64,000 nt of DNA from Neoechinorhynchus agilis (taxonomy: Eukaryota > Animalia > Acanthocephala). The DNA lies in contig CM121341.1 in assembly GCA_051530055.1 (NCBI GenBank), positions 12,068,784 through 12,132,783 of the forward strand. The letters run 5' to 3'. Made by a program: the position numbers and the translations under genes. Shown here one piece after another: positions 5,525 to 48,271 of this stretch. Each line of letters begins with the position of its first letter. Within the stretch, counting starts at the first letter, position 1. A model generated the notes under the pieces. It was not told the origin of the DNA. It worked only from the letters and a program-made list of their open reading frames with translations, and did not search any database.

Positions 5525-8500
5525 TCATTCCTTGTTAAGGTGAGCGATCATATTGAGAGAAGTTGCTCTACCAAACTGTTGTTGTTGAGTTTGCTGTTGA
5601 AGACTATAAATAGCCTGTAAGATTTCCTTTGGAACATTGCTTCTCTCTTGATCAGTCAAATTAATATCATTTAAATAAGCCCACAGCCCAACAGCTAAAT
5701 TCTTTTCTTTTTGGAGAATACGAGCCAATTCGGTTGTAGGAATGCGAAACAATAACGGAATGGAGTGAGGCTGACAGATTTGACAACATTTAATAAATCC
5801 TTCCCAGAGTTTCGGATACTCCCATAACCTCTTTTCGACGATAAATGAATCGAGAAGAGTCATTATATCTTTAATTAAATGCTGGTTAGTATTGATGGTC
5901 TGGATGATAGTACGAAGAAGTAGGAATGGAGCGTTAGGCAGTTCCATTAATCGTTTAATAGTCTCAAGAAGTACAGAATCTTTAAAAATAGAACTACGAT
6001 TGAAGCATAGTTTGGTAGCTGCAAGGATGTTTTTTATTCGATTAGGAGAACTATCAGCAAACGGCGCGATTGTGTGAAGTTTAAAGAACAACTCTGACGG
6101 ACTATAATTAGGATTTCTCCAAAGTCTTTCAAAAGCTTGTCTGATCTCACTTTCACTGCTCATGGTGTCAACAATTCGTTCAACGAATACATCTGCCTTT
6201 TCATGATCCACCGAAGTGAGGATCGGTAACAAAAGCCTGTGATCATTGGGGTCGGATTCGTATAAAAGTTGAACTTTTTCACGAACGCTATCAGGAAGTT
6301 CCGTCTCTTCAGATAAAATCATCAAGGTCTTAATTAGGAAATTGCGTGCCTCTAATGGGCACACCTGAACGAGTTCAACGAGCTCTGGTTTATTAGAATC
6401 GATGCATTGTATAGGTTCGTCTATCATTGAGAAAAGGCAATCGGATATTTTTGGGCATTTTAACGAACCGAATATCATCGCTAGTTCGAGAAGTAGCGAA
6501 GGCTTTTGAATGAGCCAATTGAGAAACAGAGAAGCGGATATCTCTACTATAGTACGAATTTGTTCGTCGGTTTCGTTAGAGTTCACATGCAGACGATGAA
6601 GGTAGTGGAGTTTGCGAACGGCGACCTCTTCGATTTTTTCGAGGATTTGCTCAATATCGATTAGTTGGCGTTCATCGTGAAGCGAAACAAGTTGATGAAT
6701 GGCGCAGTTACGAACCTCTCGAACCTGGGAACCTGTTAAGTCGATTATTTGATCCAGGCATCGGTATCGAATAGGTCTCCGAGTAATCATTAATTCGCGC
6801 AGAGTTGTAAGAACACTTGAACATTTCGCTATGTCTTCACAGGAATACCTCGCTAATGATGTCATAACACTCTCGGTGATATATGGCGCAGAAAGGATTG
6901 TTCGGGCGAACACACGATCCTTTTGATCGCATCTTTCTTGAAGATTATCCAGAATTCGACTTAGAGCATCCTCGTATTTGGTCTCATCCCGGCGACTCGG
7001 TCGATTTGTTGTCTCTGGTTCCGTTTGTTCGTTCAAGAAATTGTTTAAACGTGCATATTCATGAAAAATCCAGTTCATCATTAAATCAGTTCGTGATGCC
7101 ACATCATTGAACAAATATTCTTCGTAGATATCTCTATAAGATTGACCAAACATCACAATCAATGAAGTCATTATTCGTCGCCGGACGGCAACACCTCCGA
7201 AAATTCTAGCAGTATCTTCAGTGTTCAAAACCCTTCGAAATGCATCCATGGCCATTCGGTTCATCTCGTCATAGGGCATCGTACGTGTAACATCAGCCAG
7301 ACGAAACTCCTTAGAAGAAAGTTTCTTTAGATTAGTACCAGGTTCATTAAGGTCACCTATTCCCGACGAAGATCCGATCACTTCAACCGAGTCATAATCC
7401 AATCCGTACAAGTGTTGTAAGCCCTCAGGTCTAGGTAATTGTTCATAACTCGTCTGAATCGCTTGATCCTCTTGATGAAATAAAGCAAATCCACGTCCGA
7501 GACCTAGTGAGTTTAAACGAGCACCGATGAGACGCGCGAGTCGATGAATTTGATCAGGAACACTCATCATTTCCGATGGAATGTATGAACTTAAAAACAC
7601 GGGGGGAACGTGGTCATCCGACAATTTTACGATATTTCCCATTATAAGTTCTACTACGTTTGGCAGAGTCAGAGATGGAAGTATGTCTGCGGCTGTAATG
7701 TCTATGCTGTTCACTTGTTCCATAACCATTTGGGGATTATTAGTCCGAAATGTAGAACTATCTTCGTCCATAGAATCGCTGTGTTTGGTTCCAGAACGCG
7801 TTCGAACTGACAATATTTTCGCTATTTCGTTCTTATCCAGCCCTAACGCTGATAGAACTATGATCAGATGCTGGTGATGTGGTGCACTTTCAAGTGTTCT
7901 AAAAAGCTCTTCGATCTTCATGAGCATCATTTTTTTAAGCATTTTGATTTGAGTCAACGAGTAGTGGACCGGAATTGTGTACCATATTGTTTCGAGTGTT
8001 TGAACGGCAAGTAAGAGCTTGTAGACGACGATAGATCATAATAAAATAGAAGAAATAAGCGATTTCTTGCGGGATTGTAAGAAGAAATTAAAGTAGACAA
8101 AAATTACGTAGGTTTTTGTGTGGTATTTTAATTTGAGACGGGTTAAAACTTTAAAGAGTAATTGTAAATTTAACCGAATTTTTTAAACTGTTAAGCAATA
8201 AATCCACATAGACTTAACGAGCTTAGAGTAAAAACGCTCTAAAAATCAATTGGAATTAATAGCTGATTGCACAAATGTTCCGCCCTCGCCGATTATGATC
8301 ATGGTTAGTCCTAGTGTCCGGATGATTTAAAGTAATATTGCAAATAGTCTCGACGCACACAATCAGATTGAGTGGGGTTATTGAATCCAATTGAGAAAAT
8401 GCAATTAATCGATTAAAGATAGCTTTTCCTTCCAATGCCAAATCCTTTTTACAGAGGAGCCCATGCTCACTGCTAATATGATCCAGACAGAACAAATTCA

Positions 8501-9077
8501 GTGGAATTGGTCCAATTCCAAGATACATGGATCCATCATTTAAGTCATTTTTAGACGATTGCGATTGAACCACGCAAATCATTTCCATAAACTTAATTAC
8601 ACAGATGCGGACACCGGGGTCGGAACTATTAATCAGAGATAATATGTATTCTTTTATCCCTTGCAGTTTATTCCATGCATTCTTCACCAGATCAGGAATA
8701 TGCCTCATCTTGGCAATCCACTTCAGACCCAATCGATAAATGTATCGACCAACACATATAGATTTCTTCACAACACTTATGTCGGGGTCATATAGTAAAG
8801 GCTGAAAGTTCTCGACGACCCTGATCAGAACTTCTGTATCGCATTTACAGGCTTCCTCGATAAATGCAACAACGGCTCTCCGCATCGCACTATTGCGGTC
8901 GTTTTGATATATCAGAATTTCATCGAGGAAATTATCCAACAGTGAAGGACTCATCCTCATTATAAGATTCTGAGCTTCTGTTAATTTTTGAATCCGTATA
9001 GAAATATCTATGTGAATCCCGACTTCCTTAACCAGTTGAGCAATTCGTTCATGATTCTCTGCAGTTTGGAAGATCAT
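5525..9077 (-). CDS. SYMPK: Symplekin; exons 9077-8313 and 8020-5525, joined by an inferred non-canonical intron
   Basis: N-terminal LLDNFLDEI...RRAVVAFIEEACKCD...VVKK and C-terminal LWEYPKLWEGFIKCCQICQPHS match symplekin. AVQTLETIWYTIPVHYSLTQI, just upstream of the 810-aa ORF, continues the homology. Confidence 0.93.
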
Positions 9078-9675: not shown

Positions 9676-9800
9676 GTTTACTTGTTAATTTTCGGCCTTC
9701 GCGTAGGCCTTCTTCAGTCTGTTGTTTTCGAACTTATATTTTTCTCCGAAAACAATAGACTGAAGAAGGCCTACGCGAAGGCCGAAAATTATCAAATAAA
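9676..9800. ncRNA. Palindromic element with a minimal hammerhead ribozyme on each strand
   Basis: CTGAAGA-A-GGCC-TACGCGAA-GGCC-GAAA-AT-TA-TC on + with an inverted copy on -; followed by AATAAA. Confidence 0.7.
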
Positions 9801-10399: not shown

Positions 10400-11900
10400 A
10401 ATAACAATGAATTATCTTTTCAACACTGGAATAAATCTTGTTGTTGTTAACAATTAACCCCACGATTCATCTCAGTTATTGTAAGCCTTCTCACCCGCCC
10501 ACCCATCATCCTTCACCTTTAACGAACACCCTCGAACATCTCCCCCATTCCAAAAACTCGAAGAATAAGCGACTTCCCAGTTTCTTTGATTACGTGCAAT
10601 TCCACCGGCGCTCGAATAACCACAAAGGTCAATCTTCCAGCCCTTCCGCATTAAAACTCTCTTTCTCCCAAATCAAGTTAATAATCATCGCTCTACCCCT
10701 ACTCAAAATCACCACAAATCAACCCGTCCAATCGTAGCTGATTCATACAAAGTCTCAAACCTAAACTCATTTCACTCAAATTTTCTAGTCGCCCCCGGAC
10801 TTCTCTCTTTGCGATTATCAATCGTTCTTTATCGGCATCCCGTAACGATTCCTCCCTTAACCCACCACCCGCAACGAACAACGCAACCCCAATCTCCCTC
10901 ACATCCGCACCCGATTTCCCGAAATCCAAAATTCCCTTCCCCACCATTTTCTGCTCTAATATTCGTCGCCTCCATCCTAAACTAGATGAAATCTCACTCA
11001 TTTCATCTACCTCAAAAGCCGACGTAGTCATCTTAACATAAACGTGGCTTATCTCCTCAGTCAACAGCAATCCAGCAATCCTTCCCGGGTACTCCTTCTT
11101 TCATACATAATGCGATGGCCGTCCAGGAGGGGGATCTCAATTTACGTACGGCAATCGCTACTTTAACCCTTTATCTCTCAGACTGTCTTCAAAACCCCCA
11201 TTTAGAATTCATCACAGTCCATTTCATAGCTCCTCTGAGAAACGGCTTTAGAGAACTCACCATTGCTGTCGTCTGTCGCCCTCCGGCCCCCCGACCTGAG
11301 TCCTCCTTGCTCCAAATTGACCCTATGATGGAGCTCATAAACTCCACAAATTCGCACCATTTCTTAATTGCAGGGGATTTCAATAATCTATATCCTCTTC
11401 TACCCTTCTCCGAGTTGCGTCAACTTATTGACTTCCCAACTCTTCTTGACGCTCACCTCGACAAAGTGTTCACAAATATCGACGCCTACTCATCCGCCCC
11501 TAAACTCCTTCCCCCCCGCGAACTCTGGCCACTCTTCGGTCCTTATCACTCCCTAAACCCCACCTCAGCGTATGAAATCTCTCTGTTTACCCGTCTGGGA
11601 TAAACGTTATCATCACATCCAAAATTTTATAAAATTGTTTAACTCTAACATCCGTACATACCACTCTGACAACACAAATGACCCTCCCTTGGCCATGCCC
11701 TCCCTAACCTCAATCATAGAAAATTCCCTAGCTTCTTCAATTCCCAAGAAATTTATTAGGATCTCCAACCACGACCCTTTCTACAAAGGCAAGCTTCTGA
11801 GGCCCATCGTAATAAATGCCCGGACTCTCCCCGTTTACAAAAAGCACTTAAGAATAAAAAACTTATCGCCCGCAAAAACTTCCTTTCCTCAAAATCCACG
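10400..11900 (+). mobile_element. Internally deleted LINE (CT-rich 5' region, APE endonuclease remnants); close copy at 58520-60420
   Basis: APE motifs in translation: ADVVILT*TWL, VCRPP, LIAGDFN, LDKVFTN. Long near-identity with the 58.5-59.9 kb region. Confidence 0.85.
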
Positions 11901-11905
11901 ATTTT

Positions 11906-11975
11906 GTGTTTGGACGAAAATTTCAATTATTTACGGACCACAAGCCTCTGGAATACATTTTTGGACGGCAGCGAA
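11906..11975 (+). mobile_element. Ty3/Gypsy RNase H micro-fragment
   Basis: FGRKFQLFTDHKPLEYIFG is the hallmark Gypsy RNase H motif. Confidence 0.75.
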
Positions 11976-11984
11976 GTTTAGGAA

Positions 11985-14050
11985 AGGTGGCGAAACGTTC
12001 TCTCTCTCGTCAATCGTCAACGTTCTCTCTCCCGTCAATCGTCAACGTTCAACGTTCTCTCTCGTCAATCGTCAAAGTTCAACGTTCTCTCTCGTCCGTC
12101 ATAAACACTTGCAATCAATGTCGAGGCCAAAGCGCTCAACCACCAAGCTCGTCCCCTGTGACATGAACGATTGTCCGGTTAAAACTCAAATATTTGTCAC
12201 AAATACTTGGGCAGCAGGCAGGAAATTTATTTGCGGTTTCTGTACTGCCGCCTTGCTCAAACCGTGTTCTCCGGTTTCCCTCCCCCTTTCCCAATAAGTA
12301 CTCAAACACTAACCACTTCCAAACCCCTAATTCCCAACCCCTTCCATCTTCAGTTTCCCCAACCCAAACCTCCTCTTCTCTCTCGCTTCACTCTTTAAAT
12401 ACTGTCCACCCACCCTTAGCTGTCGGCGCCCTCCAAGACTCCTCTCCACACTCAAATTCAACTTGTCTTCAACAATCTTCTTCCTTCCTTAATTCCGTTC
12501 CCATAATCTCGCATACCCCTCTTCCCTCGTCCCTGCATTCTAAGTCTCACTCTGCTCCGCCATTAAAACCGAACCCCCTTCCTCCTCGGCCTCATCTAAA
12601 TCTTCCACCTCCTCTCTAGCATCCCGTACTGCTAGAAAAAACCATAAACCCCTCCCATCCTTCTACGATTACGCTTCAACGTTAGCCCCATCAAAACCTA
12701 CCACCTTCTCTTCTGTACCTCGATTTTCCAGTAAAAAGCACACACCCCTACCATCCTTCAACGACTACGTTAAGCATCACTCGCCTCGTAAATTAACTCC
12801 TCCTAAATCCTCTCATCCTTGCCTCCACTCATCTCTCATCTGCCTAAAACCACTAATCCGCACCCTACGAAATCTGGAAATTTTCGCTTCGCCCCTCAGG
12901 AGCGAAAAATACCTTGGACGCTCACACTACCTCACCTCTTACCACCACCTCTTCAACTCCCAATATCCTCTTCCCCCGAGTTCATCCCGCATGCACAGTT
13001 TCCACCCTTATGGTCCCTACACTCAAATCACCCCTTACTACAGTGTCTACCAACGAATCCATAACCCCCTAACAATCCCATCGGTCAAGCCCCATCCCTT
13101 CTCTTCCTGCGCAGCTTCAACCCTCTCCGTCAGTGTCCACCCCTCATGTCCCTTCTAAACATCCCTTTCCAATAATCTTTTATTCTAACTGTTATATAGT
13201 GAGCGATGGTGACACGCACTGCGCGTCCGATCGATAATGACCAAACGATGTTTGGGGGTGTGTGCGTTTGTTTTTTTGCAGTTGGTCAGGTTTTGAAAAA
13301 ACGTTAATAAAACTTATCATGAAGAGTGAAGATACTTCACTAACATCCGCAGCTTCCTCCCCAAACTGGATGAGCTCCATATAGTTGCCTCTTCTTGCAA
13401 CGCCGACATCATTGTAATTACGGAAACATGGCTCTCACCCCATAGCAAATTATCTGCCTTCCTTCCAAACTTTCAAGCTTTTCACCTCACAAGAGACTTC
13501 CGAAACAGGGGAGGCATATCGATCTTCATCCGCGCCTCTCTCCCTTACGAGTGCTCTTCACCCTACCTTTTCATCACCGGCGATCTTGAATGGCTTCACA
13601 TCCAACTTCATCTCCCCCTCCGCAATGACCAACGTGAGATCTCTATCGCTGGCCTTTATCGCCCTCCTTCTTCAAACATCCCCAACACACTTTAACAAAT
13701 AGACCACCTATTTACTGACCTACTTTCCACTTCCTCAAATCACTTCATCATATTGGGCGATTTTAACAAACTGCCGATCCCGCCCTCCCTCTCTCATCTT
13801 TCCCAACTCGTTACTTTCCCAACACGATTCTCCTCCCGCCTTGATAAAATTTTCTCAAATATCAGGCAATACTCGTGCACTACCAAACCCCCCCGATCGC
13901 CTCGTATGACCATTGTTCCATCCTTCTCTCCCCCATCATCACCTCAAAAACGTTCCTTTTCCGACCCCTACGTTGTCTGGGATAAATGTGATCATCATAC
14001 CCAATCCTTTGCTGTATGTGTCAATTCTCTTATCACGCAAAACTGCTCTA
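11985..14050 (+). mobile_element. LINE 5' portion: tandem 5'UTR repeats, ORF1-like start, APE endonuclease pseudogene
   Basis: About 4 copies of ACGTTCTCTCTCGTCAATCGTCA at 11995-12100; Cys-rich ORF from ATG 12119; NIRSFLPKLDEL...DIIVITETWL; ILGDFN; LDKIFSN. Confidence 0.8.
13190..13339 (+). mobile_element. 150-bp solo LTR inserted in the LINE endonuclease
   Basis: TG...CA termini (TGTTATATAG...TACTTCA), exact 5-bp TSD CTAAC (13185-13189 and 13340-13344), internal AATAAA. Removing it restores IFYSN-IRSFLPK. Confidence 0.8.
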
Positions 14051-17640: not shown

Positions 17641-18154
17641 ATAATTATATTGTCCAATTAAATCATTGTAATTTCACGTTCATCAATCAGCAACGGACAA
17701 AACACAGAAAATCCGAAGAATATCCCGTGAACGGACAAAAAAAATCAATATTGATTTTTCTGAATCGAATCAAGCATCCAGTGGATCAGTTTGAAGGCAT
17801 AAAATATCGTTTTAGTACCGCATTGTTGTTTGATTGACGCAAGTGGCCTTAGCCGGAAACTTGAAGAACCGGCATCAATCACGAGAACATTCTTGATTAT
17901 TTGGAAGTTAAAAATAACTTTCAGACCTACGATTTTAACCTTTTTTATGAGCAGTGTAAAGTTAAATCCTGCGCCACGAAAAGAATTGAATAATCTGTAG
18001 CAGCTAATAGTTTCCGGCGTCAAAGCTTTATCGAACACGGGTAATAAACCTGTCGCAGTTAATATATTTTGAAGGAAACAAGACTAAGGACTCTGCAAGA
18101 TAAAAATAGAGAGCCTCTAAAGGCAAATATCTCAAGCGTTTATGAATGTGAATA

Positions 18155-20356
18155 CAGTGGATTCCGCTTAATTGGGACACCGCTTAATCGGGACAGCCGC
18201 TTATTTGGGACAAATCTCAAAGAACGAAAACCAAACCAAGAAACCAATAGTAAATTTGTATATTTAATTGGGACAACATTCCACTTAATTTGGACAGTAA
18301 ATTTAAGATTTTAGTACAGTAGAGTATCTATTAACTGATTTTGTTTTTACTGAGTTTTGGTTTAACCGAGCCGCTGCAGCGGAAAAACAAACACAACCCC
18401 CTCCTAAATCCCGGGAAAGCCAGAAAGACGGCTTCTTTCTGAACCCGACTCCCGCCTTTTATAAAGCCGTGGCGGCCTCATATCCACATTTGCAATCTTT
18501 TACATCCGAGCCGGTGCAGCGGACATTCGATTATCAATCACCTCCCGCGTGAACAACGCGTGAAGCTATTTTTTGTCAATTGTATTTTTAAAAAAATTTA
18601 CCCTTTCTAAAATGCCAAGGAACGATTTGTCACTTAGCAATAAAATTGCCTTGCTTGATAAAATAAAAAGCCAGCCGCTTAATACCAGTTATCGTCGGCT
18701 CGCTGAGATAACTGGTGTACCAATTCGAATTACAAGAAGGACAGGCAGGGACACCCAAAAGAAAACGTGAGGGGAAGGATCCAGACGTTGAAGAAGCACT
18801 GGATCAATGGTTTTCTATTGTTAGTGGCAGAGGCGTAAATATGAACGGTCCAATATTGAAGGCGAAGTCAGAGGAGTTCGCTAAAAAACTGGGCCGCAAC
18901 GATTTCAAAGCAACTGATGGTTGGTTATCGCGATGGAAAGCAAGGCACGATATTAAATTTAAAAAAGCGCACGGTGAAAAGACCAGTGCCGACAAAGAAA
19001 GTTCGGAACAGTGGAAGATTACAAAAATTCCTACCTTTTTAAAGAATTTTTGTGCTGATGACATTTACAATGCTGATGAAAATGGCTTCTATTACCGTGC
19101 TACGTCAGACGGTTCCTTACGCTATAAACATATTGCACTGTCTGGTTATAAAAAGGAGATGGACCGCATTACTGTGTTATGCTGCGCAAATATGTCAGGT
19201 ACTGACAAACGAAAGTGCCAGACCTCGATGCTTTAAGGGGTTAAGAGTGGAGGGATTACCAGTGTAGTACTATGCAAACAAAAATGCGTGGATGACTTCT
19301 GATATTTTTCGAAATTCGCTGACCAGTTGGGACAAAAATTTACAACTTAAACAAAGAAAAATTTTGCTGACTGTTGACAATTGTGTCGCACACCCTCATT
19401 TAGACAATCTACGAAATATACATCCGGAATTTCTTCCTCCTAACACCACATGCTTAGTGCAACCAATGGACATGGGTGTAATCAAAAATTTGAAGACTTT
19501 CTATCGTGGAAAATTGGTTAATTTCATATTAGAATCCATTGATGAAAACCTATTAACAAGTTCCACAACAGCCAGAAAGAGTAGTTCCCAAATTAACCTT
19601 TTGCAAGCAATACAGTTTGTCGCTGACAGTTGACGAGCTATAAAAGCCACCAATATACAGAACTGTTTTGCTAATTGCGGCTTTAAACCTTTGGATATTT
19701 TAGAAATTTTTAACAATGAAGAAAATGAGGATATGTTACCAGTTCCTGTTATTAACTCAAGAATTTTTAGCTATAGATAACAATTTACCATGCTACGATG
19801 AAAATGAGGACTGTGAGGATTCAATTGTAGAAAGTATTAAATCTAAACATGAAAAATTAGACGAAGATGAAGACGATTATGATGAATCACCTGTGCCAGT
19901 GACTAACCAGGAGGCAAAAAAGTGTATGGCCGTGTTACAAAGTTATTTTATGCAGGAAGGAAATGAAGGAAGCCCTACATCTGCACTGAACATCTGTGCT
20001 GATTTTGTAGAAGCCAACTGTCACAAAAACAAAAGACAAACTACACTTGACTCATTTTTCCATTGAATTAGTATGTATCTACCAATTAAATATTTTATTA
20101 ACGATTTTTTTAGTTTTATAATACATACATATTCATAATATATTATGTACCTATATATAAAGTTTTCAAGAGTTTATAAAATAAAATTATTGAAAAATAT
20201 GCATTGTTTAATTTTGTGTGTTACTGGTTAATGACCTTGTTCCCAAAACCAATCAAATTAATTTCTTTAAAAGTGAACTTCGCTTAATCGGGACAGACGC
20301 TTAATTGGGACAAAAAGCCTCGGTCCCGATGTGACCCAATTAAGCGGAATCGACTG
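18155..20356 (+). mobile_element. Full-length pogo/Tigger DNA transposon with a frameshifted transposase
   Basis: 22-bp TIRs CAGT(G/C)GATTCCGCTTAATTGGG and TA TSD. CENP-B HTH (LDQWF...GWLSRWKARH) and DDE motifs DENG, TVDNC and PMDMGVI lie in three frames. Confidence 0.95.
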
Positions 20357-20899
20357 TATTTTATTCCGAAATCATCCTTCTAACACCAGTTGGTGTTTTG
20401 TAAAAATTAATCATTGTTTAGTAACCTTATTTCTCAACGGACTAAGTTTGAAGTTCAGAATTATTAGAAACAATTTAAGGTGTTGACTAATTTGCTAAAT
20501 TTCAAAAATGTAGGGTCCAACTTTAATAAAAATGTATTACCACCTTTCAAAAATTCTAATTGTGAGATGTTTAATTGTCGTCATTTATCCTTTGGAAAGG
20601 TACAGAAGATTTTCCTTCGGTCATAATGCATAAATAAAGTCGCTTAAACTATTTTAAGCAGCGCGCGTAATAATTTGCACGGAATTCGAAACTTTCGTCT
20701 TAGTAACTTTTAATACTTCTTACAATATAGTTGCCTCCCTTAGTTAACTCGATCTAATCTCTATAAATCAGATTATCGTTTGGCATTCATCGGAGGAGCT
20801 TAATCGACGATATATAATCAGTATTCTCGAATTGAAGCATGATTGTTTCTATGCACTGGATTCCGATGATTCAAACCAAAGGACATCGCACTAGTTCGA

Positions 20900-22389: not shown

Positions 22390-25300
22390 ATGCACGACTA
22401 TCTCGGTCTACGCAACCCTGATCCCTTCCCGAATTTGATTTCTTCTGAACTGAAACATGTTCTAGACTCCATCAATAAAAACTTCTGCCCTCAGTAAAAT
22501 TACAACCATAGCTCCACCTCGGACTTCACTCAAATTATCACTCCCACAACTGGCACTTCTGTCAGCTTTCCAATATTCTCCTTAGTTTCGTTATATGAAG
22601 TCCTCCAACATCTCGAGAAATTACCTCAAAATAGGTCCCTCAATCCGAAATCATCAACTGAACTCCTAGCTGCATCATCCCCGAACTCACAGACTCTCTG
22701 ACCCTAATTATAAATCGCAAGTTTTTATACACCGAATCATCGAAAAGTGTTTTAAATCTCGCCTTCTTCCACTTCTTAGCAATATTTTATCGCCCCTACC
22801 ATTCGGCTTTTCGCACAAATCTTCTGCATCCGATGCCCTACTTTGCATTTTAACACGCTCCTACGCAACCTTGACAATAATCCCTCTCACGTCAACCGTC
22901 ACATTCAACTGGACTATAGTGATCCTCCTTCAAAAAAATGAACATCGGATTTCCACCGAATCATCGAAAAGTGTTTTAAATCTCGCCTTCTTCCACTTAG
23001 CAATATTTTATCGCCCTTACCATTCGGCTTTTCGCACAAATCTTCTGCATCCGATGCCCTACTTTGCATTTTTAACACGCTCCTACGCAACCTTGACAAT
23101 AATCACTCTCACGTCAACCGTCACATTCAACTGGACTATAGTGATCCTTCTTCAAAAAATGAACATCGGATTTCCACCGAATCATCGAAAAGTGTTTTAA
23201 ATCTCGCCTTCTTCAACTTCTTAGCAATATTTTATCGCCCCTACCATTCGGCTTTTCGCACAAATCTTCTGCATCCGATGCCCTACTTTGCATTTTTAAC
23301 ACGCTCCTACGCAAGCTTGACAATAATCCTCTCACGTCAATCACATTCAACTGGACTACTATAGTGATCCTTCTTCAAAAAAATGAACATCGGATTTCCA
23401 CCGAATCATCGAAAAGTGTTTTAAATCTCGCCTTCTTCCACTTCTTAGCAATATTTTATCGCCCCTACCATTCGGCTTTTCGCACAAATTTTCTGCATCG
23501 GATGCCCTGCTTTGCATTTTTAACACGCTCCTACGCAACCTTGACAATAATCCCTCTCACGTCTACCGTCACATTCAGCTGGACTATAGTGATCCTTCTT
23601 CAAAAAAATGAACATCGGATTTCCACCGAATCATCGAAAAGTGTTTTAAATCTCGCCTTCTTCCACTTCTTAGCAATATTTTATCGCCCCTACCATTCGG
23701 CTTTTCGCACAAATCTTCTGCATCCGATGCCCTACTTTGCATTTTTAGCACGCTCCTACGCAACCTTGACAATTATCCCTCTCACGTCAACCGTCACATT
23801 CAAATGGACTATAGTGATCCTTCTTCAAAAAAATGAACATCGGATTTCCACCGAATCATCGAAAAGTGTTTTAAATCTCGCCTTCTTCCACTTCTTAGCA
23901 ATATTTTATCGCCCCTACCATTCGGCTTTTCGCACAAATCTTCTGCATCCGATGCCTTACTCTGCATTTTTAACACGCTCCTACGCAACCTTGACAATAA
24001 TCCCTCTCACGTCAACCGTCACATTCAACTGGACTATTGTGATCCTCCTTTAAAAAAATGAACATCGGATTTCCACCGAATCATCGAAAAGTGTTTTAAA
24101 TATCGCCTTATTCCACTTCTTAGCAATATTTTATCGCCCCTACCATTCGGCTTTTCGCACAAATTTTCTGCATCCGATGCCCTACTTTGCATTTTTAACA
24201 CGCTCCTACGCAACCTTGACAATAATCCCTCTCACGTCAACCGTCACATTCAACTGGACTATATATCCTTCTTCAAAAAAAAACATCGGATTTCCACCGA
24301 ATCATCGAAAAGTGTTTTAAATCTCGGCTCTCTTCCACTTCTTAGCAATATTTTATCGCCCCTACCATTCGGCTTTTCGCACAAATCTTCTGATGCCCTA
24401 CTTTTAACACGCTCCTACGCAACCTTGACAATAATCCCTCTCACGTCAACCGTCACATTCAACTGGACTATAGTGATCCTTCTTCAAAAAAATGAACATC
24501 GGATTTCCACCGAATCATCGAAAAGTGTTTTAAATCTCGCCTTCTTCCACTTGTTAGCAATATTTTTATCGCCCCTACCATTCGGCTTTTCGCACAAATT
24601 TTCTGCATCGGATGCCCTACTTTGCATTTTTAACACGCTCCTACGCAACCTTGACAATAATCCCTCTAACGTCAACCGTCACATTCAACTGGACTATAGT
24701 GATCCTCCTTCAAAAAAATGAACATCGGATTTCCACCGAATCATCGAAAAGTGTTTTAAATCTCGCCTTCTTCCACTTAGCAATATTTTATCGCCCCTAC
24801 CATTCGGCTTTTCGCACAAATCTTCTGCAACCGATGCCCTATTTTGCATTTTTAACACGCTCCTACGCAACCTTGACAATAATCCCCTCTCACGTCAACC
24901 GTCACATTCAACTGGACTATAGTGATCCTTCTTCAAAAATGAACATCGGATTTCCACCGAATCATCGAAAAGTGTTTTAAATCTCGCCTTCTTCCACTTC
25001 TTAGCAATATTTTATCGCCCCTACCATTCGGCTTTTCGCACAAATCTTCTGCATCCGATGCCCTACTTTGCATTTTTAACACGCTCCTACGCAACCTTGA
25101 CAATAATCCGTCTCACGTCAACCGTCACATTCAACTGGACTATAGTGATCCTTCTTCAAAAAAATGAACATCGCATTTCCACCGAATCATCGAAAAGTGT
25201 TTTAAATCTCGCCTTCTTCCACTTCTTAGCAATATTTTATCGCCCCTACCATTCGGCTTTTCGCACAAATTTTCTGCATCCGATGCCCTACTTTTCATTT

Positions 25301-27943
25301 TTAACACACACCTACGCAACCTTGACAATAATCCCTCTCACGTTAACCGTCACATTAAACTGGACTATAGTGATCCTTCTTCAAAAAAATGAACATCGGA
25401 TTTCCACGGAATCATCGAAAAGTGTTTTAAATCTCGCCTTCTTCCACTTCTTAGCAATATTTTATCGCCCCTACCATTCGGCTTTTCGCACAAATCTTCT
25501 GCATCCGATGCCCTACTTTGCATTTTTAACACGCTCCTACGCAAGCTTGACAATAATCCCTCTCACGTCAACCGTCACATTCAACTGGACTATAGTGATC
25601 CTTCTTCAAAAAATGAACATCGGATTTCCACCGAATCATCGAAAAGTGTTTTAAATCTCGCCTTCTTCCACTTCTTAGCAATATTTTATCGCCCCTACCA
25701 TTCGGCTTTTCGCACAAATTTTCTGCATCGGATGCCCTACTTTGAATTTTTAACACGCTCCTACGCAACCTTGACAATAATCCCTCTCACGTCTACCGTC
25801 ACATTCAGCTGGACTATAGTGATCCTTCTTCAAAAAAATGAACATCGGATTTCCACCGAATCATCGAAAAGTGTTTTAAATCTCGCCTTCTTCCACTTCT
25901 CAGCAATATTTTATCGCCCCTACCATTCGGCTTTTCGCACAAATCTTCTGCATCCGATGCCCTACTTTGCATTTTTAGCACGCTCCTACGCAACCTTGAC
26001 AATTATCCCTCTCACGTCAACCGTCACATTCAAATGGACTATAGTGATCCTTCTTCAAAAAAATGAACATCGGATTTCCACCGAATCATCGAAAAGTGTT
26101 TTAAATCTCGCCTTCTTCCACTTCTTAGCAATATTTTATCGCCCCTACCATTCGGCTTTTCGCACAAATCTTCTGCATCCGATGCCCTACTTTTCATTTT
26201 TAACACGCTCCTACGCAACCTTGACAATAATCCCTCTCACGTCAACCGTCACATTCAACTGGACTATTGTGATCCTCCTTTAATAAAATGAACATCGGAT
26301 TACCACCGAATCATCGAAAAGTGTTTTAAATATCGCCTTCTTCCACTTCTTAGCAATATTTTATCGCCCCTACCATTCGGCTTTTCGCACAAATTTTCTG
26401 CATCGGATGCCCTACTTTGCATTTTTAACACGCTCCTACGCAACCTTGACACAATAATCCCTCTCACGTCAACCGTCACATTCAACTGGACTATAGTGAT
26501 CCTTCTTCAAAAAAATGAACATCGGATTTCCACCGAATCATCGAAAAGTGTTTTAAATCTCGCCTCTTCTTCCACTTCTTAGCAATATTTTATCGCCCCT
26601 ACCATTCGGCTTTTCGCACAAATCTTCTGCATCCGATGCCCTACTTTGCATTTAACACGCTCCTACGCAACCTTGACAATAATCCCTCTCACGTCAACCG
26701 TCACATTCAACTGGACTATAGTGATCCTTCTTCAAAAAAATGAACATCGGATTTCCACCGAATCATCGAAAAGTGTTTTAAATCTCGCCTTTTTCCACTT
26801 CTTAGCAATATTTTATCGCCCCTACCATTCGGCTTTTCGCACAAATCTTCTGCATCCGATGCCCTACTTTGCATTTTTAACACGCTCCTACGCAACCTTG
26901 ACAATAATCCTTCACGTCAACCGTCACATTCAACTGGACTATAGTGATCCTCCTTCAAAAAAATGAACATCGGATTTCCACCGAATCATCGAAAAGTGTT
27001 TTAAATCTCGCCTTCTTCCACTTAGCTATATTTTATCGCCCCTACCATTCGGCTTTTCGCACAAATCTTCTGCATCCGATGCCCTACTTTGCATTTTTAT
27101 CACGCTCCTACGCAACCTTGACAATAATCCCTCTCACGTCAACCGTCACATTCAACTGGACTATAGTGATCCTTCTTCAAAAAAATGAACATCGGATTTC
27201 CACCGAATCATCGAAAAGTGTTTTAAATCTCGCCTTCTTCCACTTCTTAGCAATATTTTATCGCCCCTACCATTCGGCTTTTCGCACAAATCTTCTGCAT
27301 CCGATGCCCTACTTTGCATTTTTAACACGCTCCTACGCAACCTTGACAATAATCCGTCTCACGTCAACCGTCACATTCAACTGGACTATAGTGATCCTTC
27401 TTCAAAAAAATGAACATCGTATTTCCACCGAATCATCGAAAAGTGTTTTAAATCTCGCCTTCTTCCAGTTCTTAGCAATATTTTATCACCCCTACAATTC
27501 GGCTTTTCGCACAAATTTTCTGCATCCGATGCCCTACTTTGAATTTTTAACACGCTCCTACGCAACCTTGACAATAATCCCTCTCACGTCAACCGTCACA
27601 TTCAGTTGGACTATAGTGATCCTTCTTCAAATGAACATCGGATTTTCACCGAATCATCGAAAAGTTTTTAAATCTCGCCTTCTTCCACTTCTTAACAATA
27701 TTTTATCACCCCTACCATTCGGCTTTTCGCACAAATCTTCTGCATCCGATGCCCTACTTTGCATTTTTAACACGCTCCTACGCAACCTTGACAATAATCC
27801 CTCTCACGTCAATCGTTCACATTCAACTAGACTATAGTGATCCTTCTTCAAAAAAATGAACATCGGATTTCCACCGAATCATCGAAAAGTGTTTTAAATC
27901 TCGCCTTCTTCCACTTCTTACAATATTTTATCGCCCCCCCCCA

Positions 27944-27980
<37 letters not shown>

Positions 27981-36616: not shown

Positions 36617-39097
36617 TTAGCAGATCTCTTGACATCCGTGTAACTGAATTTTAGTGAACTTGTCAGACTTACGACCTATATCGTCGAGATCAGCGACGAC
36701 CTTTAAAAAGTGAGTGAAAGTAGAAGCTATTTAGTTTACTTACTCTTTTAGCGAGTAATTTTAAATGGGCGATCAAATCGCTGATTTCTTTTGCGGCTTT
36801 TTGAATATCGAGTCGGGTAATCTCGATCTCTTGTTCATGTTTGTTCAGTAGGTTTCTATGACGCTGGGAAATTTGTGCTCAGTTCGCAAGAATAAATCAC
36901 TGAACGCTGACAGAAATTGGTTAAAGAGGTCATTGGTTAAGCAGAACATCTTCTAATGGAATAATCGGAAATATAGATTTTTAAAATAAAATGGTGGTCA
37001 CAATTATTGGTAAATACAGTTCATTTCTTTTCCCGTTTTCTTTATAAAAACTCGCAGTTTTGTTTTAAAAATATATTCTTTAGCTATAGATAGTTATTGG
37101 TAGACATAATGGGAAGCTTGATCTTAATGTCGAGTGAAAGTAGAAACTAATAAAATCTATTTAGAATGTCTTTAAGTGAAAAGAGCTTTTGCAGTCTACA
37201 ATAATAAAATTTTAGCAACAAATTTCCCCGTGCCTTATAGCGATCAACTCGTGATAGATCCTTTTCCAAATCAGACATCCACATCTTTGCTCTTCGTTCA
37301 CTCTCACAAATGCAACATAGCTGAACAAAGCGATCGGATTCGAGACTAGCAATAAGCTCAGACAAATTCCGGATATCCTTTTCCGTGCTATCAGTATCTA
37401 TAAGCCACTCAAACATGTGATTGGCATCGTCCTCTAGACTCTGGATCAGTCGTGATTTGGAGAAAGCAAGCAGCTAAAAACCATGCATTGTGTTTGTGCT
37501 TTTATGGAGAAAAAGTCAAACCTGGTAAAGACCTACTTTGACAGAAGATCTGTTTGCAGAATCTCTAAGTATTTCTGGATTACGATCGCCATAGATCACT
37601 TTCCGTATTGAATCTAGGTAAGGGTTTTCGTCGTTTACGACAGCCCCTAGGTTTGATTTGCTCATGTGAGCATCGTATGACAGTATTACACGATGGGTTT
37701 TTCGTGAAGTTTCAAAGAAAATACGCCATCTATTAAATTAACTATAGTGATTTTCAAAACTTAAAAGAATCTGCGATCTATATTTCACTTTTCTTTGAAA
37801 TTAAAAGACTCAAAAACCTTGCCGAATAAACCCACTCGTGCTTGAAGCAACTTTTAAGCTGATCGTTTTGACGAAGAGCGTTGTAGTATCGATCGCACAA
37901 AACGAGCCGCTCCGAATGAAGACCAGCGATTTCTTCTATAATATCGACTCCTTCAATTCCAAGTCTCGATGCTTTCTTACGAAATGCTTCTATTGATCGA
38001 TTTAGCGCTATTGTCGATCCATTCTTTAGTTTTACACATTTCTTACACAACTCCGATTTTAGGTGGGTAAGGAAATTAAAGGATTTACCTCCAATGCACA
38101 TTGAAGACGCTTCATGTCATTTCTCGCCTTCTTTAAATCGTTATAATAGAGACTGTTCAATTTTTGAGTTTCATATACTTTTTTCAGATAAAATTTTAAT
38201 TATTTGAAGTGTAAAGTAAAACTTAACGTACTTAAATGCCCATTTGTGGATTTTAGATCATTACAGATTCGAATCCAGTCTTTAAGTAAGGGATTGGTGT
38301 AAGATCCGAACAGATTCGTTTTTCCTAATTCCTTGTCACTGATAAGATAATCACGGATTGCAAGACATTTGTGGTAGTCGAAGCCTTTAAAATGTTGCAA
38401 TGAGCCTTCAGAAATATTAAACGTTGCTTAGTTTTAATTTAAGAAGATAACGAAAAAGAAGTTCACACGGCTCGATGGTATTTAAAAAAGCGATCGTCAA
38501 TAAAGTTACTTAAACTGTGATTAAAGAACTCAAATTAGCACAGCGAAATGGGTTGCGGGGCATTTGACAAGGGACTTCCCACGTGCCAGACATTTTATCT
38601 CCTTGACAGAATAGGCGAAGCATGCATCAGACAATTAACTAACTCCATTTTTTCCAGTTTAAATTTAAGAGCATTCCCGGAATGGATTTTATACGATCTA
38701 TTGCCAATTTTATATTCACCTTTTCGTTACAAAGGAGGAAATTATAAATCGCTTAAAATCTCAGCCCAGTATCACGCAATGTTTCGATTTTCGCCTTGAT
38801 ACATTATCTTTCCACGCTAACAAAACAGCAAACGATGAGCAAGAACCGAGCATTTAATTATTACGATACTCGTTTATCTACATGGCGAATTTGAAAAAAC
38901 TTACACAATTCATTTCTGAACTCATAAAATTCAAAGGAAGAAGGTATTTGGCAGGTCTCCTTAATTTTTTTATAAGCAGTATAAAGTCGATCGATGACTG
39001 ATGAATCCACGAGAGATGCACCTTCTCTTTCAATAAAATCAGGCAAGCGTGAAAGGTGAACAACAAGAGTTTTAGTAGTTTTTCCTTTATCGATCAT
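36617..39097 (-). CDS. CDK5RAP3: CDK5RAP3 (C53/LZAP) homolog with ~8 exons; internal boundaries partly uncertain
   Basis: YHKCLAIRDYL...KTNLFGSYTNPLLKDW, ASRLGIEGVDIIEEI, ILRDSANRSSVKVGLYQ|LLAF. GT-AG introns of ~31-54 nt, one of 499 nt, and one ~370-nt intron with inverted-repeat ends. Confidence 0.85.
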
Positions 39098-45959: not shown

Positions 45960-48271
45960 ATGTCACAATCTCTGATGGTGCATTCAGAATCGAACTGTTC
46001 AATAACCGATCGATACATTGAGTCTACTTACACCTACGAACACAGCATTGCACGAAAAACGGATGATGGACAGATCCGTGTAGCTACCGAGCGAGTCCCG
46101 ATGGTTATCCGAACAGACAAAACTGCACCTAAAAAATTAGGGGTTCTTATAGTCGGCATTGGTGGAAACAATGGATCAAGTCTGATCGCAATGCACTTTG
46201 CAAACAAGCGAAAGATTTCTTGGCGTACAAAGAACGGGGATCAACAAGCAAACTATTACGGTTCCTTGACTCAATCTGGAACACTTTATGTAGGATCAGA
46301 TTATGCAACCGGTAAACTTATCTACGCTCCTTTTCAATCATTTTTACCAATGGTTTGTCCGGATGATATCGTATTTGGAGGATGGGACATTCGAAGAGCT
46401 GACCTCTGGCTTGCAGCGAAATATGCCCGAGTAATGGACCCTGAAATGCTCGATAAAGTACAAAATGACCTTCAATCAATAAAACCAATGAAAGCCCTGT
46501 TCGACGTTCAGTTCGTCAATGCGAATCAAACAGAAAGATGCGATAACCTCAAATCCGGTTCACGATACGTACTCGTGGATCAAATCCGAGACGATATTAG
46601 ACAATTCAAAGCTGCTAATCGTCTCGATAATGTGATTGTTGTGTGGATGGCGAACACTGAACGGTATTGCGATGTAAGAAACGGACTGAATCTCACTGAA
46701 AGTGAACTTATGGCATCGCTAATAAGAAACGAATCCGAAATCTCTCCGTCTACTCTATATGGCATTGCTTCTGTTCTCGAAGGATGTGCTTACATTAACG
46801 GGTCGCCGCAAAACACTTTTGTTCCTGGTCTTATTGAATTGGCCGAACGTCTTCAAGTGCCAATAATTGGCGACGATTTAAAAACGGGACAAACAAAGGT
46901 GAAATCTGTACTTGTGGATTTCCTTGTTTCCGCTGGAATGAAACCTTTGTCCATTGTCAGTTATAACCATCTCGGAAATAATGACGGGCTTAATTTGTCT
47001 GCCTTCAAGCAGTTCAGAAGCAAAGAGGTAAGAGAGGTTAAGATAAAATTAAGCCGAAATTTATATCGATTGTTGTATTTTAGATCAGCAAAAGCAGTGT
47101 AAAGAACATCCGATTCCACCAATCATTTCTATGGCAGTTTTTCCGATTTGGGTTTACTTGTGTGTGGCTATAGTTTAGCATTTTGATATTCAACCTAACA
47201 AAATTAGAGAATAACATCGTAGATGGCCTTCTTCGACTCGAGTACTTATCGTAATCTTCTAGCTTTTAATTTTACCTTAAATTCTTAGCCATTAATAACT
47301 ATTTTGATCAAACGAAGGCGTAAACCTGTAGTGGTGCATTGAATATCAAAAACTCTAAGGTGCGTAATTTTAGGTTGAACTTTTAGTTAGGAGAGAAAAT
47401 ACAAGTGGATTTTGATCCAATAGTAATTTACACCATAGCAGTTTTTACTGAGCAAGTTTTCTATATCTCATGTGCTCGTGTTTTCGTGCAATAATTACAC
47501 CTAAGCTAATATTCGATTCCCAAAAAAGTAATTCTAAAATGACAGCCATGTCTAAAACTTCTTAAGTTCTAAAAAGGTATGTATTTGATAATAACGCCCT
47601 CTTCTTTAAAAAGCCGATCAGTGGAATACGATGTGAGTAGTTGACGACGCAATTCAAAGCAATCCTATTTTATATCCTCGAAAGTACGATAATGAAGCCA
47701 ATAAGTTATCGATTGACCACTGTATTGTCATAAAGTACGTCCCAGCCGTCGGAGACTCCAAGCGAGCCATGGACGAATACTACACGGAAATTGCTTGCGG
47801 CGGTCGCCACACTCTTGCGATTCATAATACATGCGAAGATTCTTTACTTGCAGCACCTCTAATACTCGATCTGATTCTCCTGACAGAACTCTTTTCTCGA
47901 ATGGCTTTTAGTTTGGACAAAGGTCAACATTGGTCTCAAATGCACCCAGTGTTCAGCGTTCTATCGTACCTATGCAAAGCTCCACTCGTTCCCGATGGTA
48001 CCCCAGTGGTCAATGCCCTCTTTAGTCAAAGAGCTTGCATTGAAAACCTGATCAGGTTTGTGGATTTCTTCATTTAAGGTTATTTCTGACATACTATTCA
48101 ACGAGAGTGATTTTTAGAGCTGCCGTCGGATTATCGCCGGTCAATCATATGATGCTTGAGTCTAAATTAGTCGAAATGGGCAAGATGCCAAAGCGTCTTC
48201 AAGAGAAATTATATCGAATGCGTGGAGCATGCGAACACAATCACGTACAAAATGGAGGAGATGCTCTCTGA
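45960..48271 (+). CDS. ISYNA1: Myo-inositol-1-phosphate synthase; exons 45960-47027, 47084-~47098, ~47637-48055, 48118-48271
   Basis: [69 protein letters not shown]. Confidence 0.97.

What the first reader, a model, noticed from the sequence alone, without database searches (positions are those of the whole stretch)
8021..8312. Symplekin intron with no GT-AG solution; best fit is AG-AC with paired ends
Homology requires joining ...LNHPD(T) to KLLLAVQTLETI. No in-frame GT donor occurs before the stop at 8258. The only compatible AG acceptor (8018) would need a GC donor after ~15 non-homologous residues. Removing 292 nt as ACT|AGGAC...TCTAC|AAG restores the frame. The ends pair imperfectly (TAGGACTAACCATGATCATAAT versus the reverse complement TAGACGACGATAGATCATAAT), including a perfect 9-mer. 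Symplekin is an essential 3'-processing factor, and both flanking ORFs are otherwise intact.
Basis: partly seen in the sequence, partly recalled or inferred. Interest (0 to 1): 0.75.

Follow-up and report, generated by a model that had tools for sequence, protein, structure and literature searches.

The report
Hairpin-ended non-GT intron in symplekin
The symplekin gene of the thorny-headed worm Neoechinorhynchus agilis is split by about 292 bases that have inverted-repeat ends and no usable GT start, so the gene works only if they are removed by unconventional splicing, and a second gene nearby is split the same way.

Summary
The window is Neoechinorhynchus agilis (Acanthocephala) chromosome CM121341.1. 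The minus-strand symplekin gene is two intact ORFs, 9077-8313 and 8020/8017-5525, separated by a stop-containing segment. No GT-AG intron keeps both frame and homology.

Removing 292 nt (AG..AC) or 295 nt (AG..AG, using the ordinary acceptor at 8019-8018) makes the Pfam N-terminal domain contiguous. It also gives the inter-helix loop the 36-37 residues seen in 44 of 49 symplekins. The GC-AG alternative adds 13 residues, scores lower and has a very weak donor. So the 5' end is non-GT in every homology-consistent solution, but "AG-AC" is only one of several allowed registers.

The 9-bp terminal inverted repeat is real (P about 0.004-0.014). Eight clear GT-AG introns in the window lack such repeats.

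I found a second case. The myo-inositol-phosphate synthase gene carries a 538-nt insert with inverted-repeat ends and a 3-nt direct repeat. Its exact removal restores a motif that is ungapped in 117 of 117 homologues. A third hairpin-ended segment sits in CDK5RAP3, where GC-AG ends are possible.

Best reading: transposon-like, hairpin-ended introns removed without GT, as in Fritillaria and Amoebophrya. I found no report of this in Acanthocephala. I could not reach any RNA data. Public RNA-seq exists and would settle the question.

The parts
8313..9077 (-). Symplekin coding exon 1 (ATG at 9077-9075, ends ...CCG GAC ACT = P-D-T). In the genomic frame the ORF runs on into the insert to a TAA at 8258-8256.
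   Evidence: ORF list. Pfam SYMPK_PTA1_N 1-144/229, 89.8 bits. In 208 library hits homology always ends at residue 256 or earlier.
8021..8312 (-). Intervening sequence, 292 nt in the AG..AC register (AGGACUAACC...CGUCGUCUAC). It contains stops in all three frames and shows no homology.
   Evidence: Its removal makes the Pfam domain contiguous, 1-222/229, 96.3 bits.
8018..8020 (-). AAG. Either the first codon of exon 2 (Lys, 292-nt register) or the last 3 nt of the intron, which then ends in an ordinary AG (295-nt register). It is the first AG downstream of the pyrimidine tract.
   Evidence: Sequence. The 295-nt join scores 100.1 bits and gives the majority loop length of 36.
5525..8017 (-). 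Symplekin coding exon 2 (LLLAVQTLETIW... to the stop at 5527-5525). It holds the rest of the N-terminal domain and Symplekin_C.
8292..8300 (-). 5' arm of the terminal inverted repeat (GAUCAUAAU, intron positions 13-21).
   Evidence: the repeat finder pair I12, 100% complementary. Paired in both the MFE and centroid folds.
8034..8042 (-). 3' arm of the terminal inverted repeat (AUUAUGAUC, 13 nt before the AC end).
8022..8060 (-). Pyrimidine-rich tract at the 3' end of the insert (GCUUAUUUCUUCUAUUUUAUUAUGAUCUAUCGUCGUCUA), with a possible CUUAU branch site. It contains no AG.
   Evidence: Read from the sequence. It resembles the 3' regions of the clear GT-AG introns of the window.
8269..8270 (-). 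GC of the only semi-canonical donor (TGT|GCAATC). This is the rival GC-AG solution.
   Evidence: Penalised.
47102..47639 (+). Second case: a 538-nt insert in the myo-inositol-1-phosphate synthase gene. GTA is repeated directly at both borders. Subterminal inverted repeat ACATCCGATTCCAC / GTGGAATACGATGT.
36864..37233 (-). Third hairpin-ended segment, between two CDK5RAP3 exons. An 11-nt perfect inverted repeat (GGGAAATTTGT / ACAAATTTCCC) lies 5 and 2 nt inside possible GC..AG ends.

Best explanation
The 292-295 nt at 8312-8021/8018 are a transposon-like intervening sequence with inverted-repeat ends. It sits inside the conserved N-terminal helical-repeat domain of an otherwise intron-free symplekin gene.

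To make a functional protein the transcript must lose exactly this segment. The 5' cut falls after ...GAC ACT, where the intron begins AG, not GU. The 3' cut falls either at ...CUAC| or three bases later at the ordinary ...CAAG|.

I infer that removal happens at the RNA level. On this reading the spliceosome uses a non-GU 5' site, and the terminal stem (9 bp plus an outer 4 bp) holds the two ends together. A normal pyrimidine tract marks the 3' side. In the AG..AC register the first and last bases form an A-C pair, which the catalytic centre tolerates.

It is not a one-off. Two more genes in the same 64 kb carry hairpin-ended segments of 370-538 nt, while ordinary introns here are mostly 43-88 nt GT-AG.

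Shown: the gene structure, the lack of a canonical solution, the terminal repeats and the recurrence. Inferred: that the segment is excised from RNA, by which machinery, and at which exact bases.
For: Gene structure and exact-length requirement:
- The joined protein aligns without a gap.
- Loop length is 36-37 in 44 of 49 symplekins, against 50 for GC-AG.
- Pfam bits: 295 join 100.1, 292 join 96.3, GC-AG 91.0, exon 1 alone 89.8, GT8354 85.8.

No canonical path.

Terminal inverted repeats beyond chance:
- Symplekin P=0.0044 (perfect 9-mer) or 0.014 (mismatch-tolerant score).
- MIPS P=0.0034.
- CDK5RAP3 P=0.003.
- Eight clear GT-AG introns in the window score at background level, 4-7.
- Both folds pair the ends.

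Second locus: exact removal of 538 nt restores RSKEISKSSVVDD. This motif is ungapped in 117 of 117 homologues. The best GT-AG alternative deletes one residue of it.

The assembly was built largely from a pool of 50 worms (PMC12690905). This makes rare null alleles in two genes 39 kb apart unlikely.

The public annotation splits both genes exactly at the inserts, into 273+800 aa and 385+146 aa.

Precedents:
- Fritillaria AG/AC introns with inverted-repeat ends (PMC13326754, PMC11282704).
- Amoebophrya introners with 8-20 nt inverted and 3-5 nt direct repeats (PMC7789003).
Against: - I had no transcript evidence of any kind.
- The exact ends are undetermined.
- The 5' site has no resemblance to a U1-binding site.
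- The three inserts share no sequence, and none has another copy in the window. A transposon family is therefore not demonstrated.
- Symplekin has no target-site duplication, and removing a TA-flanked element (290 nt) would not restore the frame.
- The overall folds are not unusually stable (z = -1.09 and +0.83).
- A GC-AG solution exists. It falls in a loop where two homologues carry 3-residue insertions, and this protein has other lineage-specific insertions.
- The sample is one window.
Confidence: 0.5

Rival explanations
1. An ordinary U2-type GC-AG intron (8270-8018, 253 nt). The 5' part of the insert is exonised and adds 13 residues net (RTNHDHNRRGRNIC in place of K) to an inter-helix loop.
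For: It is the only single-intron solution with accepted dinucleotides that keeps all homologous residues. The acceptor is the first AG after a good pyrimidine tract. The site is a loop where P0216 and P0246 carry 3-residue insertions. A GC..AG reading is also possible for the CDK5RAP3 segment.
Against: The donor TGT|GCAATC lacks the -1 G and +5 G that GC donors normally need (established knowledge of GC-AG introns). All 8 clear donors in the window are GT, most of them preceded by G. A 13-residue insertion is without precedent among 49 symplekins. Pfam scores it 5-9 bits lower. It would leave one arm of a significant terminal repeat in the exon. The tail never aligns in 208 hits.
Confidence: 0.17
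2. A gene-disrupting transposon insertion that is not removed. The assembled copy would be a null or decaying allele of symplekin, and likewise of MIPS, with function supplied by another allele or copy, or lost.
For: MIPS shows a textbook fresh insertion: a perfect direct repeat, inverted-repeat ends and exact empty-site restoration. The window is dense in mobile elements. Acanthocephalans lack many conserved genes (PMC12256650, PMC12690905). A gut parasite might not need MIPS.
Against: Both symplekin ORFs are intact over 1,086 codons with significant domain hits, although the insert shows no target duplication and its repeats are degenerate, which suggests age. Two or three such events in about 7 host genes of one window is far above any plausible load of null alleles. 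The assembly is largely a consensus of 50 worms. Symplekin is essential in the organisms where this has been tested (established knowledge).
Confidence: 0.15
3. Assembly or consensus error near the junction in a hybrid ONT/Illumina assembly of pooled worms. An indel or substitution would hide a real GT donor, for example GT at 8272, which is out of frame by one base.
For: The assembly is a MaSuRCA hybrid from pooled, polymorphic material. GT(8272)-AG(8018) would be a 255-nt intron if a 1-nt error were present (reasoning).
Against: Both flanking ORFs are error-free over 3.2 kb. That donor is also weak and would still add about 14 residues. An independent second locus shows the same kind of problem, with a direct repeat that an error would not create.
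Confidence: 0.05
4. Use of a cryptic upstream GT donor (8354 or 8360) with AG 8018, which deletes 15-17 residues of the domain.
For: These are the only in-frame GT-AG pairs.
Against: They remove a conserved helix (LNLIVCVETICNITLNHPDT). The Pfam match breaks at profile position 133 and drops to 85.8 bits. The donors GTCGAG and GTGTGC are poor.
Confidence: 0.04
5. Removal at the DNA level (somatic excision of the element), or expression as two separate products, for instance spliced-leader trans-splicing at the 8018 acceptor.
For: The TIR-delimited element TAGGAC...GTCTA is exactly 292 nt, and its precise deletion restores the frame (reasoning). Spliced-leader trans-splicing is known in rotifers (own knowledge).
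Against: Precise intragenic DNA elimination is not known in animals (own knowledge). The split would fall inside a single folded domain, at profile position 144 of 229.
Confidence: 0.04

Closest known systems
Non-canonical AG/AC and AG/AT introns of the tunicate Fritillaria borealis (Henriet et al. 2019; PMC13326754; reviewed in PMC11282704)
   Same: The intron can be read as AG...AC. The last three bases are TAC (a YAY triplet). It has inverted-repeat ends of transposon type, G at +2 and +3, lies in a gene that otherwise lacks introns, and would need a U2-type spliceosome to accept a non-GU 5' end.
   Different: In Fritillaria about 95% of introns are non-canonical. Here at least 8 of about 11 introns in the window are plain GT-AG. 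There is no YAY triplet directly upstream of the 5' cut (ACT; CAC is one base off). There is no target duplication at symplekin. This is a different phylum, a protostome parasite. U2AF duplication and snRNA modification could not be examined.
Introner elements of the dinoflagellate Amoebophrya (PMC7789003)
   Same: Inverted repeats of 8-20 nt join the two intron ends into a hairpin. Short direct repeats overlap the borders (3 nt at the MIPS insert). The terminal dinucleotides vary. The elements mostly cannot be grouped into families. Standard gene predictors break at them.
   Different: Those are protists that appear to lack U1 (no U1 snRNA was detected, and a U1 protein is marked missing), and there the non-canonical class is the majority. 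The symplekin insert has only a 1-nt border repeat.
Nonconventional introns of euglenids (PMC11282704, PMC12501133)
   Same: Variable borders, base pairing between subterminal positions that brings the ends together, and border repeats that make the exact cut ambiguous.
   Different: The euglenid pairing sits at fixed positions (+4 to +6 with -8 to -6). Here the main stems start 12-13 nt (symplekin) or 4-5 nt (MIPS) from the ends.
U2-type GC-AG introns and U12-type AT-AC introns
   Same: A GC donor exists 42 nt inside the insert. An A...C terminal pair is shared with AT-AC introns.
   Different: The GC donor lacks the compensating consensus. No ATATCC 5' motif and no TCCTTAAC branch site are present.
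Transposon insertions removed from mRNA by splicing (Tc1 in C. elegans, Ds/dSpm in maize; own knowledge, not checked here)
   Same: A DNA transposon inserted in an exon is tolerated because most of it is spliced out of the transcript.
   Different: Those cases use cryptic GT-AG sites and are usually imprecise. Here homology demands near-exact removal, for which no GT-AG pair exists.

Membership tests
U2-type GT-AG / GC-AG spliceosomal intron | GT (or GC) at the 5' end in a position that keeps the reading frame and the homologous residues | tested here: not met
   Enumeration of all donor/acceptor pairs. The only options are GC 8270 (+13 aa) and GT 8354/8360 (-15/-17 aa). All are penalised by loop length and Pfam score.
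U2-type GT-AG / GC-AG spliceosomal intron | AG at the 3' end preceded by a pyrimidine tract | tested here: met
   CAAG| at 8019-8018 is the first AG after a tract of about 40 nt that is rich in pyrimidines. It is used in the 295-nt register, which scores best.
U2-type GT-AG / GC-AG spliceosomal intron | 5' site complementary to U1 (consensus MAG|GTRAGT) | tested here: not met
   ACT|AGGACT and TGT|GCAATC compared by eye with the 8 clear donors of the window. They match at 4 and 3 of 9 positions, and neither has GT at +1/+2.
U12-type AT-AC intron | 5' ATATCCTT and branch site TCCTTAAC near the 3' end | tested here: not met
   Neither motif is in the insert (sequence).
Fritillaria-type AG/AC non-canonical intron | AG at the 5' end and AC or AT at the 3' end | tested here: inconclusive
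   AG..AC is an allowed register. So are GG..CA, TA..TA and AG..AG. Only RNA can decide.
Fritillaria-type AG/AC non-canonical intron | YAY triplet as the last three intron bases and immediately upstream of the 5' site | tested here: inconclusive
   3' end TAC: met. Upstream triplet ACT: not met, since CAC is offset by one base (rule from PMC13326754, which describes the upstream triplet as 'often' present).
Fritillaria-type AG/AC non-canonical intron | Transposon hallmarks: terminal inverted repeats, target duplication, repeated family | tested here: inconclusive
   Inverted repeats: met. Target duplication: absent. Other copies: none in 64 kb. The genome-wide check was not possible.
Fritillaria-type AG/AC non-canonical intron | Removal from mRNA demonstrated, and dependent on the U2-type spliceosome | not testable with these tools
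   No N. agilis transcripts turned up in the protein searches I could run.
Amoebophrya-type introner element | 8-20 nt inverted repeat between the two intron ends | tested here: met
   9 perfect, 13 of 21 overall. MIPS 15 of 19. CDK5RAP3 11 perfect.
Amoebophrya-type introner element | 3-5 nt direct repeat overlapping the exon/intron borders | tested here: not met
   Only 1 nt (A) at symplekin. Met at the MIPS insert (GTA).
Tc1/mariner-pogo-type MITE insertion | TA target duplication flanking inverted repeats, with an empty site that restores the host sequence | tested here: not met
   TA flanks exist (cac-TA-GGAC...GTC-TA-caag), but deleting the element plus one TA (290 nt) shifts the frame (reasoning). 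The same test is met at MIPS. The repeats of the window's own pogo-like element are unrelated.

The most novel reading that the evidence does not exclude
Neoechinorhynchus agilis, and perhaps acanthocephalans in general, carries a genome-wide class of transposon-like, hairpin-ended intervening sequences inside coding exons. These would be excised precisely from RNA without GT-AG ends, alongside an ordinary GT-AG intron population. I found no report of such a class in a protostome animal. It would also mean that part of the reported loss of conserved genes in these parasites is gene-model failure at such sites.
Probability: 0.35. Interest if true: 0.8.

Novelty: new member of a known kind. Interest (0 to 1): 0.6.

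Why it matters
Introns that ignore the GT-AG rule and derive from mobile elements are known from very few lineages: Fritillaria, Amoebophrya and other dinoflagellates, and euglenids. They are central to the question of how new introns arise and how far the spliceosome can be stretched.

A parasitic worm with a 46-Mb genome that mixes ordinary short GT-AG introns with hairpin-ended non-GT ones would be a tractable new case. Both classes could be compared within one nucleus.

There is also a practical consequence. The public annotation cuts symplekin and MIPS in two exactly at these inserts. BUSCO completeness is higher in the transcriptome than in the genome, 54.9% against 47.1%. Claims of massive gene loss in acanthocephalans may therefore be partly inflated.

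The question can be answered with data that are already public.

Tried and rejected
1. My first guess was that the window came from Fritillaria borealis. This was wrong. The MIPS protein is annotated as Neoechinorhynchus agilis and lies on the same 19.4-Mb record.

2. Canonical rescue. I enumerated every single GT/GC-AG and AT-AC pair and every two-intron GT-AG path. None fits the homology.

3. U12-type intron: the motifs are absent.

4. Known structured RNA: Rfam finds nothing at 7800-8500 or anywhere in the window.

5. Repeat family: neither this insert nor the other two has another copy in the window, and they are unrelated to each other.

6. Sampling more of the genome with a Penelope-like element protein as bait. 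This returned no N. agilis copies, so no genome-wide test was possible.

7. Closer relatives that might show the ancestral junction. An exhaustive HMMER search found nothing above 39% identity.

8. INSIG looked like another odd junction. It has a strong GT-AG intron (43845-43134), which the public model also uses.

9. Tandem duplication as the origin of the CDK5RAP3 segment. Only an 18-nt shared motif was found, so this is not supported.

10. Using the split BRAKER models as evidence against GC-AG. I judged this weak, because the same annotation also misses the C-terminal half of CDK5RAP3, which is reached through good GT-AG introns.

11. Literature. I found no paper on non-canonical introns or introners in Acanthocephala or rotifers.
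Full report
**Where the window comes from.** The 273-aa ORF lies on NCBI record CM121341.1 of assembly GCA_051530055.1, 19.4 Mb. The neighbouring inositol-phosphate synthase is named [quoted passage not shown]. The organism is therefore an eoacanthocephalan, a thorny-headed worm within the rotifer clade. Its genome paper (PMC12690905) describes a 46.2-Mb assembly in three chromosomes. It was built with MaSuRCA from ONT and Illumina reads of a pool of 50 worms plus reads of single females, and annotated with BRAKER. That paper never mentions introns (0 occurrences) and uses splice/splicing only in its reference list. Window position W equals record position 12,068,783 + W.

**The observation.** On the minus strand, ORF 9077-8256 (273 aa) matches Pfam SYMPK_PTA1_N at profile positions 1-144 of 229. 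The long ORF ending at 5525 matches Symplekin_C at 1-181 of 182. The N-terminal domain is thus cut in the middle.
- Deleting 8312-8021 (292 nt) gives one 1086-aa ORF. It aligns across the junction without a gap.
- I enumerated every GT/GC donor between 8460 and 8256 against every AG between 8110 and 7900. The in-frame, stop-free solutions are GC(8270)-AG(8018), which adds 13 residues net, and GT(8354)/GT(8360)-AG(8018), which delete 15 or 17 conserved residues.
- Two-intron GT-AG paths need a 5-nt micro-exon or add 14-29 residues.

**How tightly homology fixes the removal.** An exhaustive HMMER search with exon 1 found 208 symplekins. None exceeded 39% identity, and the match never extended past residue 256, so the tail RTNHDHNRRGRNICAISY is never homologous.
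- I aligned 49 diverse symplekins. The stretch from the helix before the junction to the NLP motif after it is 36 residues in 36 sequences, 37 in 8, 38 in 1 and 39 in 3. One sequence has 52, with the extra residues elsewhere.
- For N. agilis the 292-nt removal gives 37, a 295-nt removal gives 36, and GC-AG gives 50.
- Pfam scores rank the same way: 100.1 bits (295 nt), 96.3 (292 nt), 91.0 (GC-AG), 89.8 (exon 1 alone) and 85.8 (GT 8354, where the match breaks).
- The data therefore ask for removal of 292 or 295 nt. In both cases the 5' cut follows ...GAC ACT and the intron begins AG.
- The 3' cut is either ...CTAC| (8021) or the ordinary ...CAAG| (8018). The latter is the first AG after a pyrimidine-rich tract of about 40 nt.
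- Within the 292-nt solution, AG..AC and GG..CA give the same mRNA, and TA..TA gives the same protein. "AG-AC" is therefore allowed but not established.
- One argument favours it. The first and last bases would form an A-C pair, which is isosteric with the G-G pair of GT-AG introns (PMC13326754).

**The paired ends.** A perfect complement of at least 9 nt between the first and last 30 nt occurs in 73 of 16,545 random 292-nt segments of this window. A score that tolerates mismatches gives 140 of 9,910. The MFE and centroid folds both pair the 9-mer and an outer GGAC/GUCU helix. The overall fold is not unusually stable (z = -1.09). Rfam finds nothing.

**What ordinary introns look like here.** I could define eight clear GT-AG introns in the window: two in MIPS, five in CDK5RAP3 and one in INSIG. 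Six are 43-88 nt and two are 499 and 712 nt. Their terminal-repeat scores are 4-7, which is background. The public model of INSIG uses exactly the intron I predicted. This genome therefore has a normal GT-AG spliceosome, and the symplekin segment is an exception rather than the rule.

**A second case.** The MIPS gene (plus strand) runs 45960-47027, then a 56-nt GT-AG intron, then 18 nt encoding ISKSSV, then 538 nt containing stops (47102-47639), and resumes with VVDDAIQSN.
- GTA is repeated directly at both borders, so four registers give the same mRNA: GT..GA, TA..AG, AA..GT and AA..TA.
- Exact removal yields RSKEISKSSVVDD. All 117 homologues retrieved have this motif ungapped.
- The best GT-AG pair (47097-47637) would delete one residue of it.
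- The insert has subterminal inverted repeats, 15 of 19 (score 11; 34 of 9,901 random segments reach this). The folds pair them.
- This is the anatomy of a DNA transposon inserted into an exon with a TA or GTA target duplication.

**A third hairpin-ended segment.** It lies between two CDK5RAP3 exons (36864-37233), with an 11-nt perfect inverted repeat (30 of 9,832 random segments). GC..AG ends are possible there, and homology is too weak to decide.

**Do the inserts form a family?** The three inserts share no sequence, and none has another copy in the window.

**What it most likely is.** Two or three of about seven host genes in 64 kb carry such segments. The assembly is largely a consensus of 50 worms. 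Both symplekin ORFs are intact over 1,086 codons, although the insert looks old (no target duplication, degenerate repeats).
- Rare null alleles do not explain this well.
- The most economical reading is that these are transposon-derived intervening sequences which the worm removes from its transcripts, with the terminal stem bringing the ends together.
- For symplekin I think a spliceosomal mechanism is likelier than an unknown one, because the 3' side looks like a normal 3' splice region.
- I put this reading at about 0.5. The alternatives are GC-AG with a 13-residue loop insertion at about 0.17, an unremoved disrupting insertion at about 0.15, and errors, cryptic donors or DNA-level removal at about 0.13 in total.

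**Comparison with what is known.** The closest systems are the following.
- Fritillaria borealis AG/AC and AG/AT introns, which have transposon-type ends and a 3' YAY triplet.
- Amoebophrya introner elements, with 8-20 nt inverted repeats and 3-5 nt direct repeats.
- Euglenid nonconventional introns.

The symplekin segment shares the hairpin, a possible AG/AC pair and the 3' TAC. It lacks the upstream YAY triplet and a border repeat, and it coexists with a majority of normal introns. I found no report of such introns in acanthocephalans or rotifers. I therefore file it as a probable new member of the known kind "mobile-element-derived non-canonical introns", pending RNA evidence.

**Limits.** I could reach no transcript data. 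Attempts to sample more of the genome or to find closer relatives failed. The public annotation splits both genes at the inserts. That shows the practical cost of these segments, but it is only weak evidence about splicing, because the same annotation also misses exons reached through good GT-AG introns.

Noticed in passing
window 47102-47639 (+), MIPS gene 45960-48271: A 538-nt insert with a GTA direct repeat and inverted-repeat ends interrupts the catalytic-motif region of myo-inositol-1-phosphate synthase. It leaves an 18-nt exon between it and a 56-nt GT-AG intron. Exact removal restores a motif that is ungapped in 117 of 117 homologues.
   Followed up: yes
window 36864-37233 (-), CDK5RAP3 gene about 36620-39096: A 370-nt segment between two CDK5RAP3 exons has an 11-nt perfect inverted repeat next to possible GC..AG ends. 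The exact junction is unresolved because homology is weak. An 18-nt motif inside it recurs in the next small intron (36712-36729).
   Followed up: partly
L001 3001-3822 and 4151-6553; L002 10001-11214, 11810-12312 and 1819-3138: The public BRAKER annotation splits symplekin (273 + 800 aa) and MIPS (385 + 146 aa) exactly at the inserts. The 385-aa MIPS model reads through into the insert. The CDK5RAP3 model (239 aa) stops early, and the C-terminal half, which weakly matches Pfam positions 391-450 of 502, is unannotated.
   Followed up: partly
window 5525-9077 (-): Apart from the one odd segment, the 1086-codon symplekin gene has no introns. This contrasts with the many introns of vertebrate symplekin genes (own knowledge) and points to heavy intron loss in this lineage.
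   Followed up: no
window 22730-33184: A satellite of about 46 copies of a 225-bp unit (93-97% matches within blocks). It is strongly C-rich on the plus strand (GC skew about -0.4) and open in one frame, which produces long artefactual ORFs.
   Followed up: partly
window 33521-35203, 41134-42395, 61111-63353: Penelope-like retroelement pieces: reverse transcriptase plus GIY-YIG-type endonuclease motifs. Two of them have long inverted duplications of 260 nt and 383 nt at 98-99% identity. Database relatives are at most 41% identical.
   Followed up: partly
window 18151-20360: A pogo/Tigger-like DNA transposon with 30-nt terminal inverted repeats (93%) and fragmented transposase ORFs (Tc5 HTH domain). 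Its ends are unrelated to those of the three inserts.
   Followed up: partly
window 9677-9800 and 53541-53644; 51374-51549 and 55557-55780: Two pairs of related foldback (MITE-like) elements in intergenic or intronic DNA. This shows that small hairpin elements are abundant in this genome.
   Followed up: no
window 10400-13200 and 58600-60500: C-rich stretches with Pro/Ser-rich ORFs lie next to fragments that look, by eye, like LINE-type endonuclease and reverse transcriptase (Pfam found no domain in the three ORFs scanned). The two regions share near-identical segments, for example the ORFs at 10699-11070 and 58874-59122.
   Followed up: no
window 39160-39498 (-): A short gene directly upstream of CDK5RAP3 weakly matches mitochondrial ribosomal protein S26 (E = 5e-4). 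CDK5RAP3's start codon follows a long pyrimidine tract and an AG, which might be a trans-splice acceptor.
   Followed up: no
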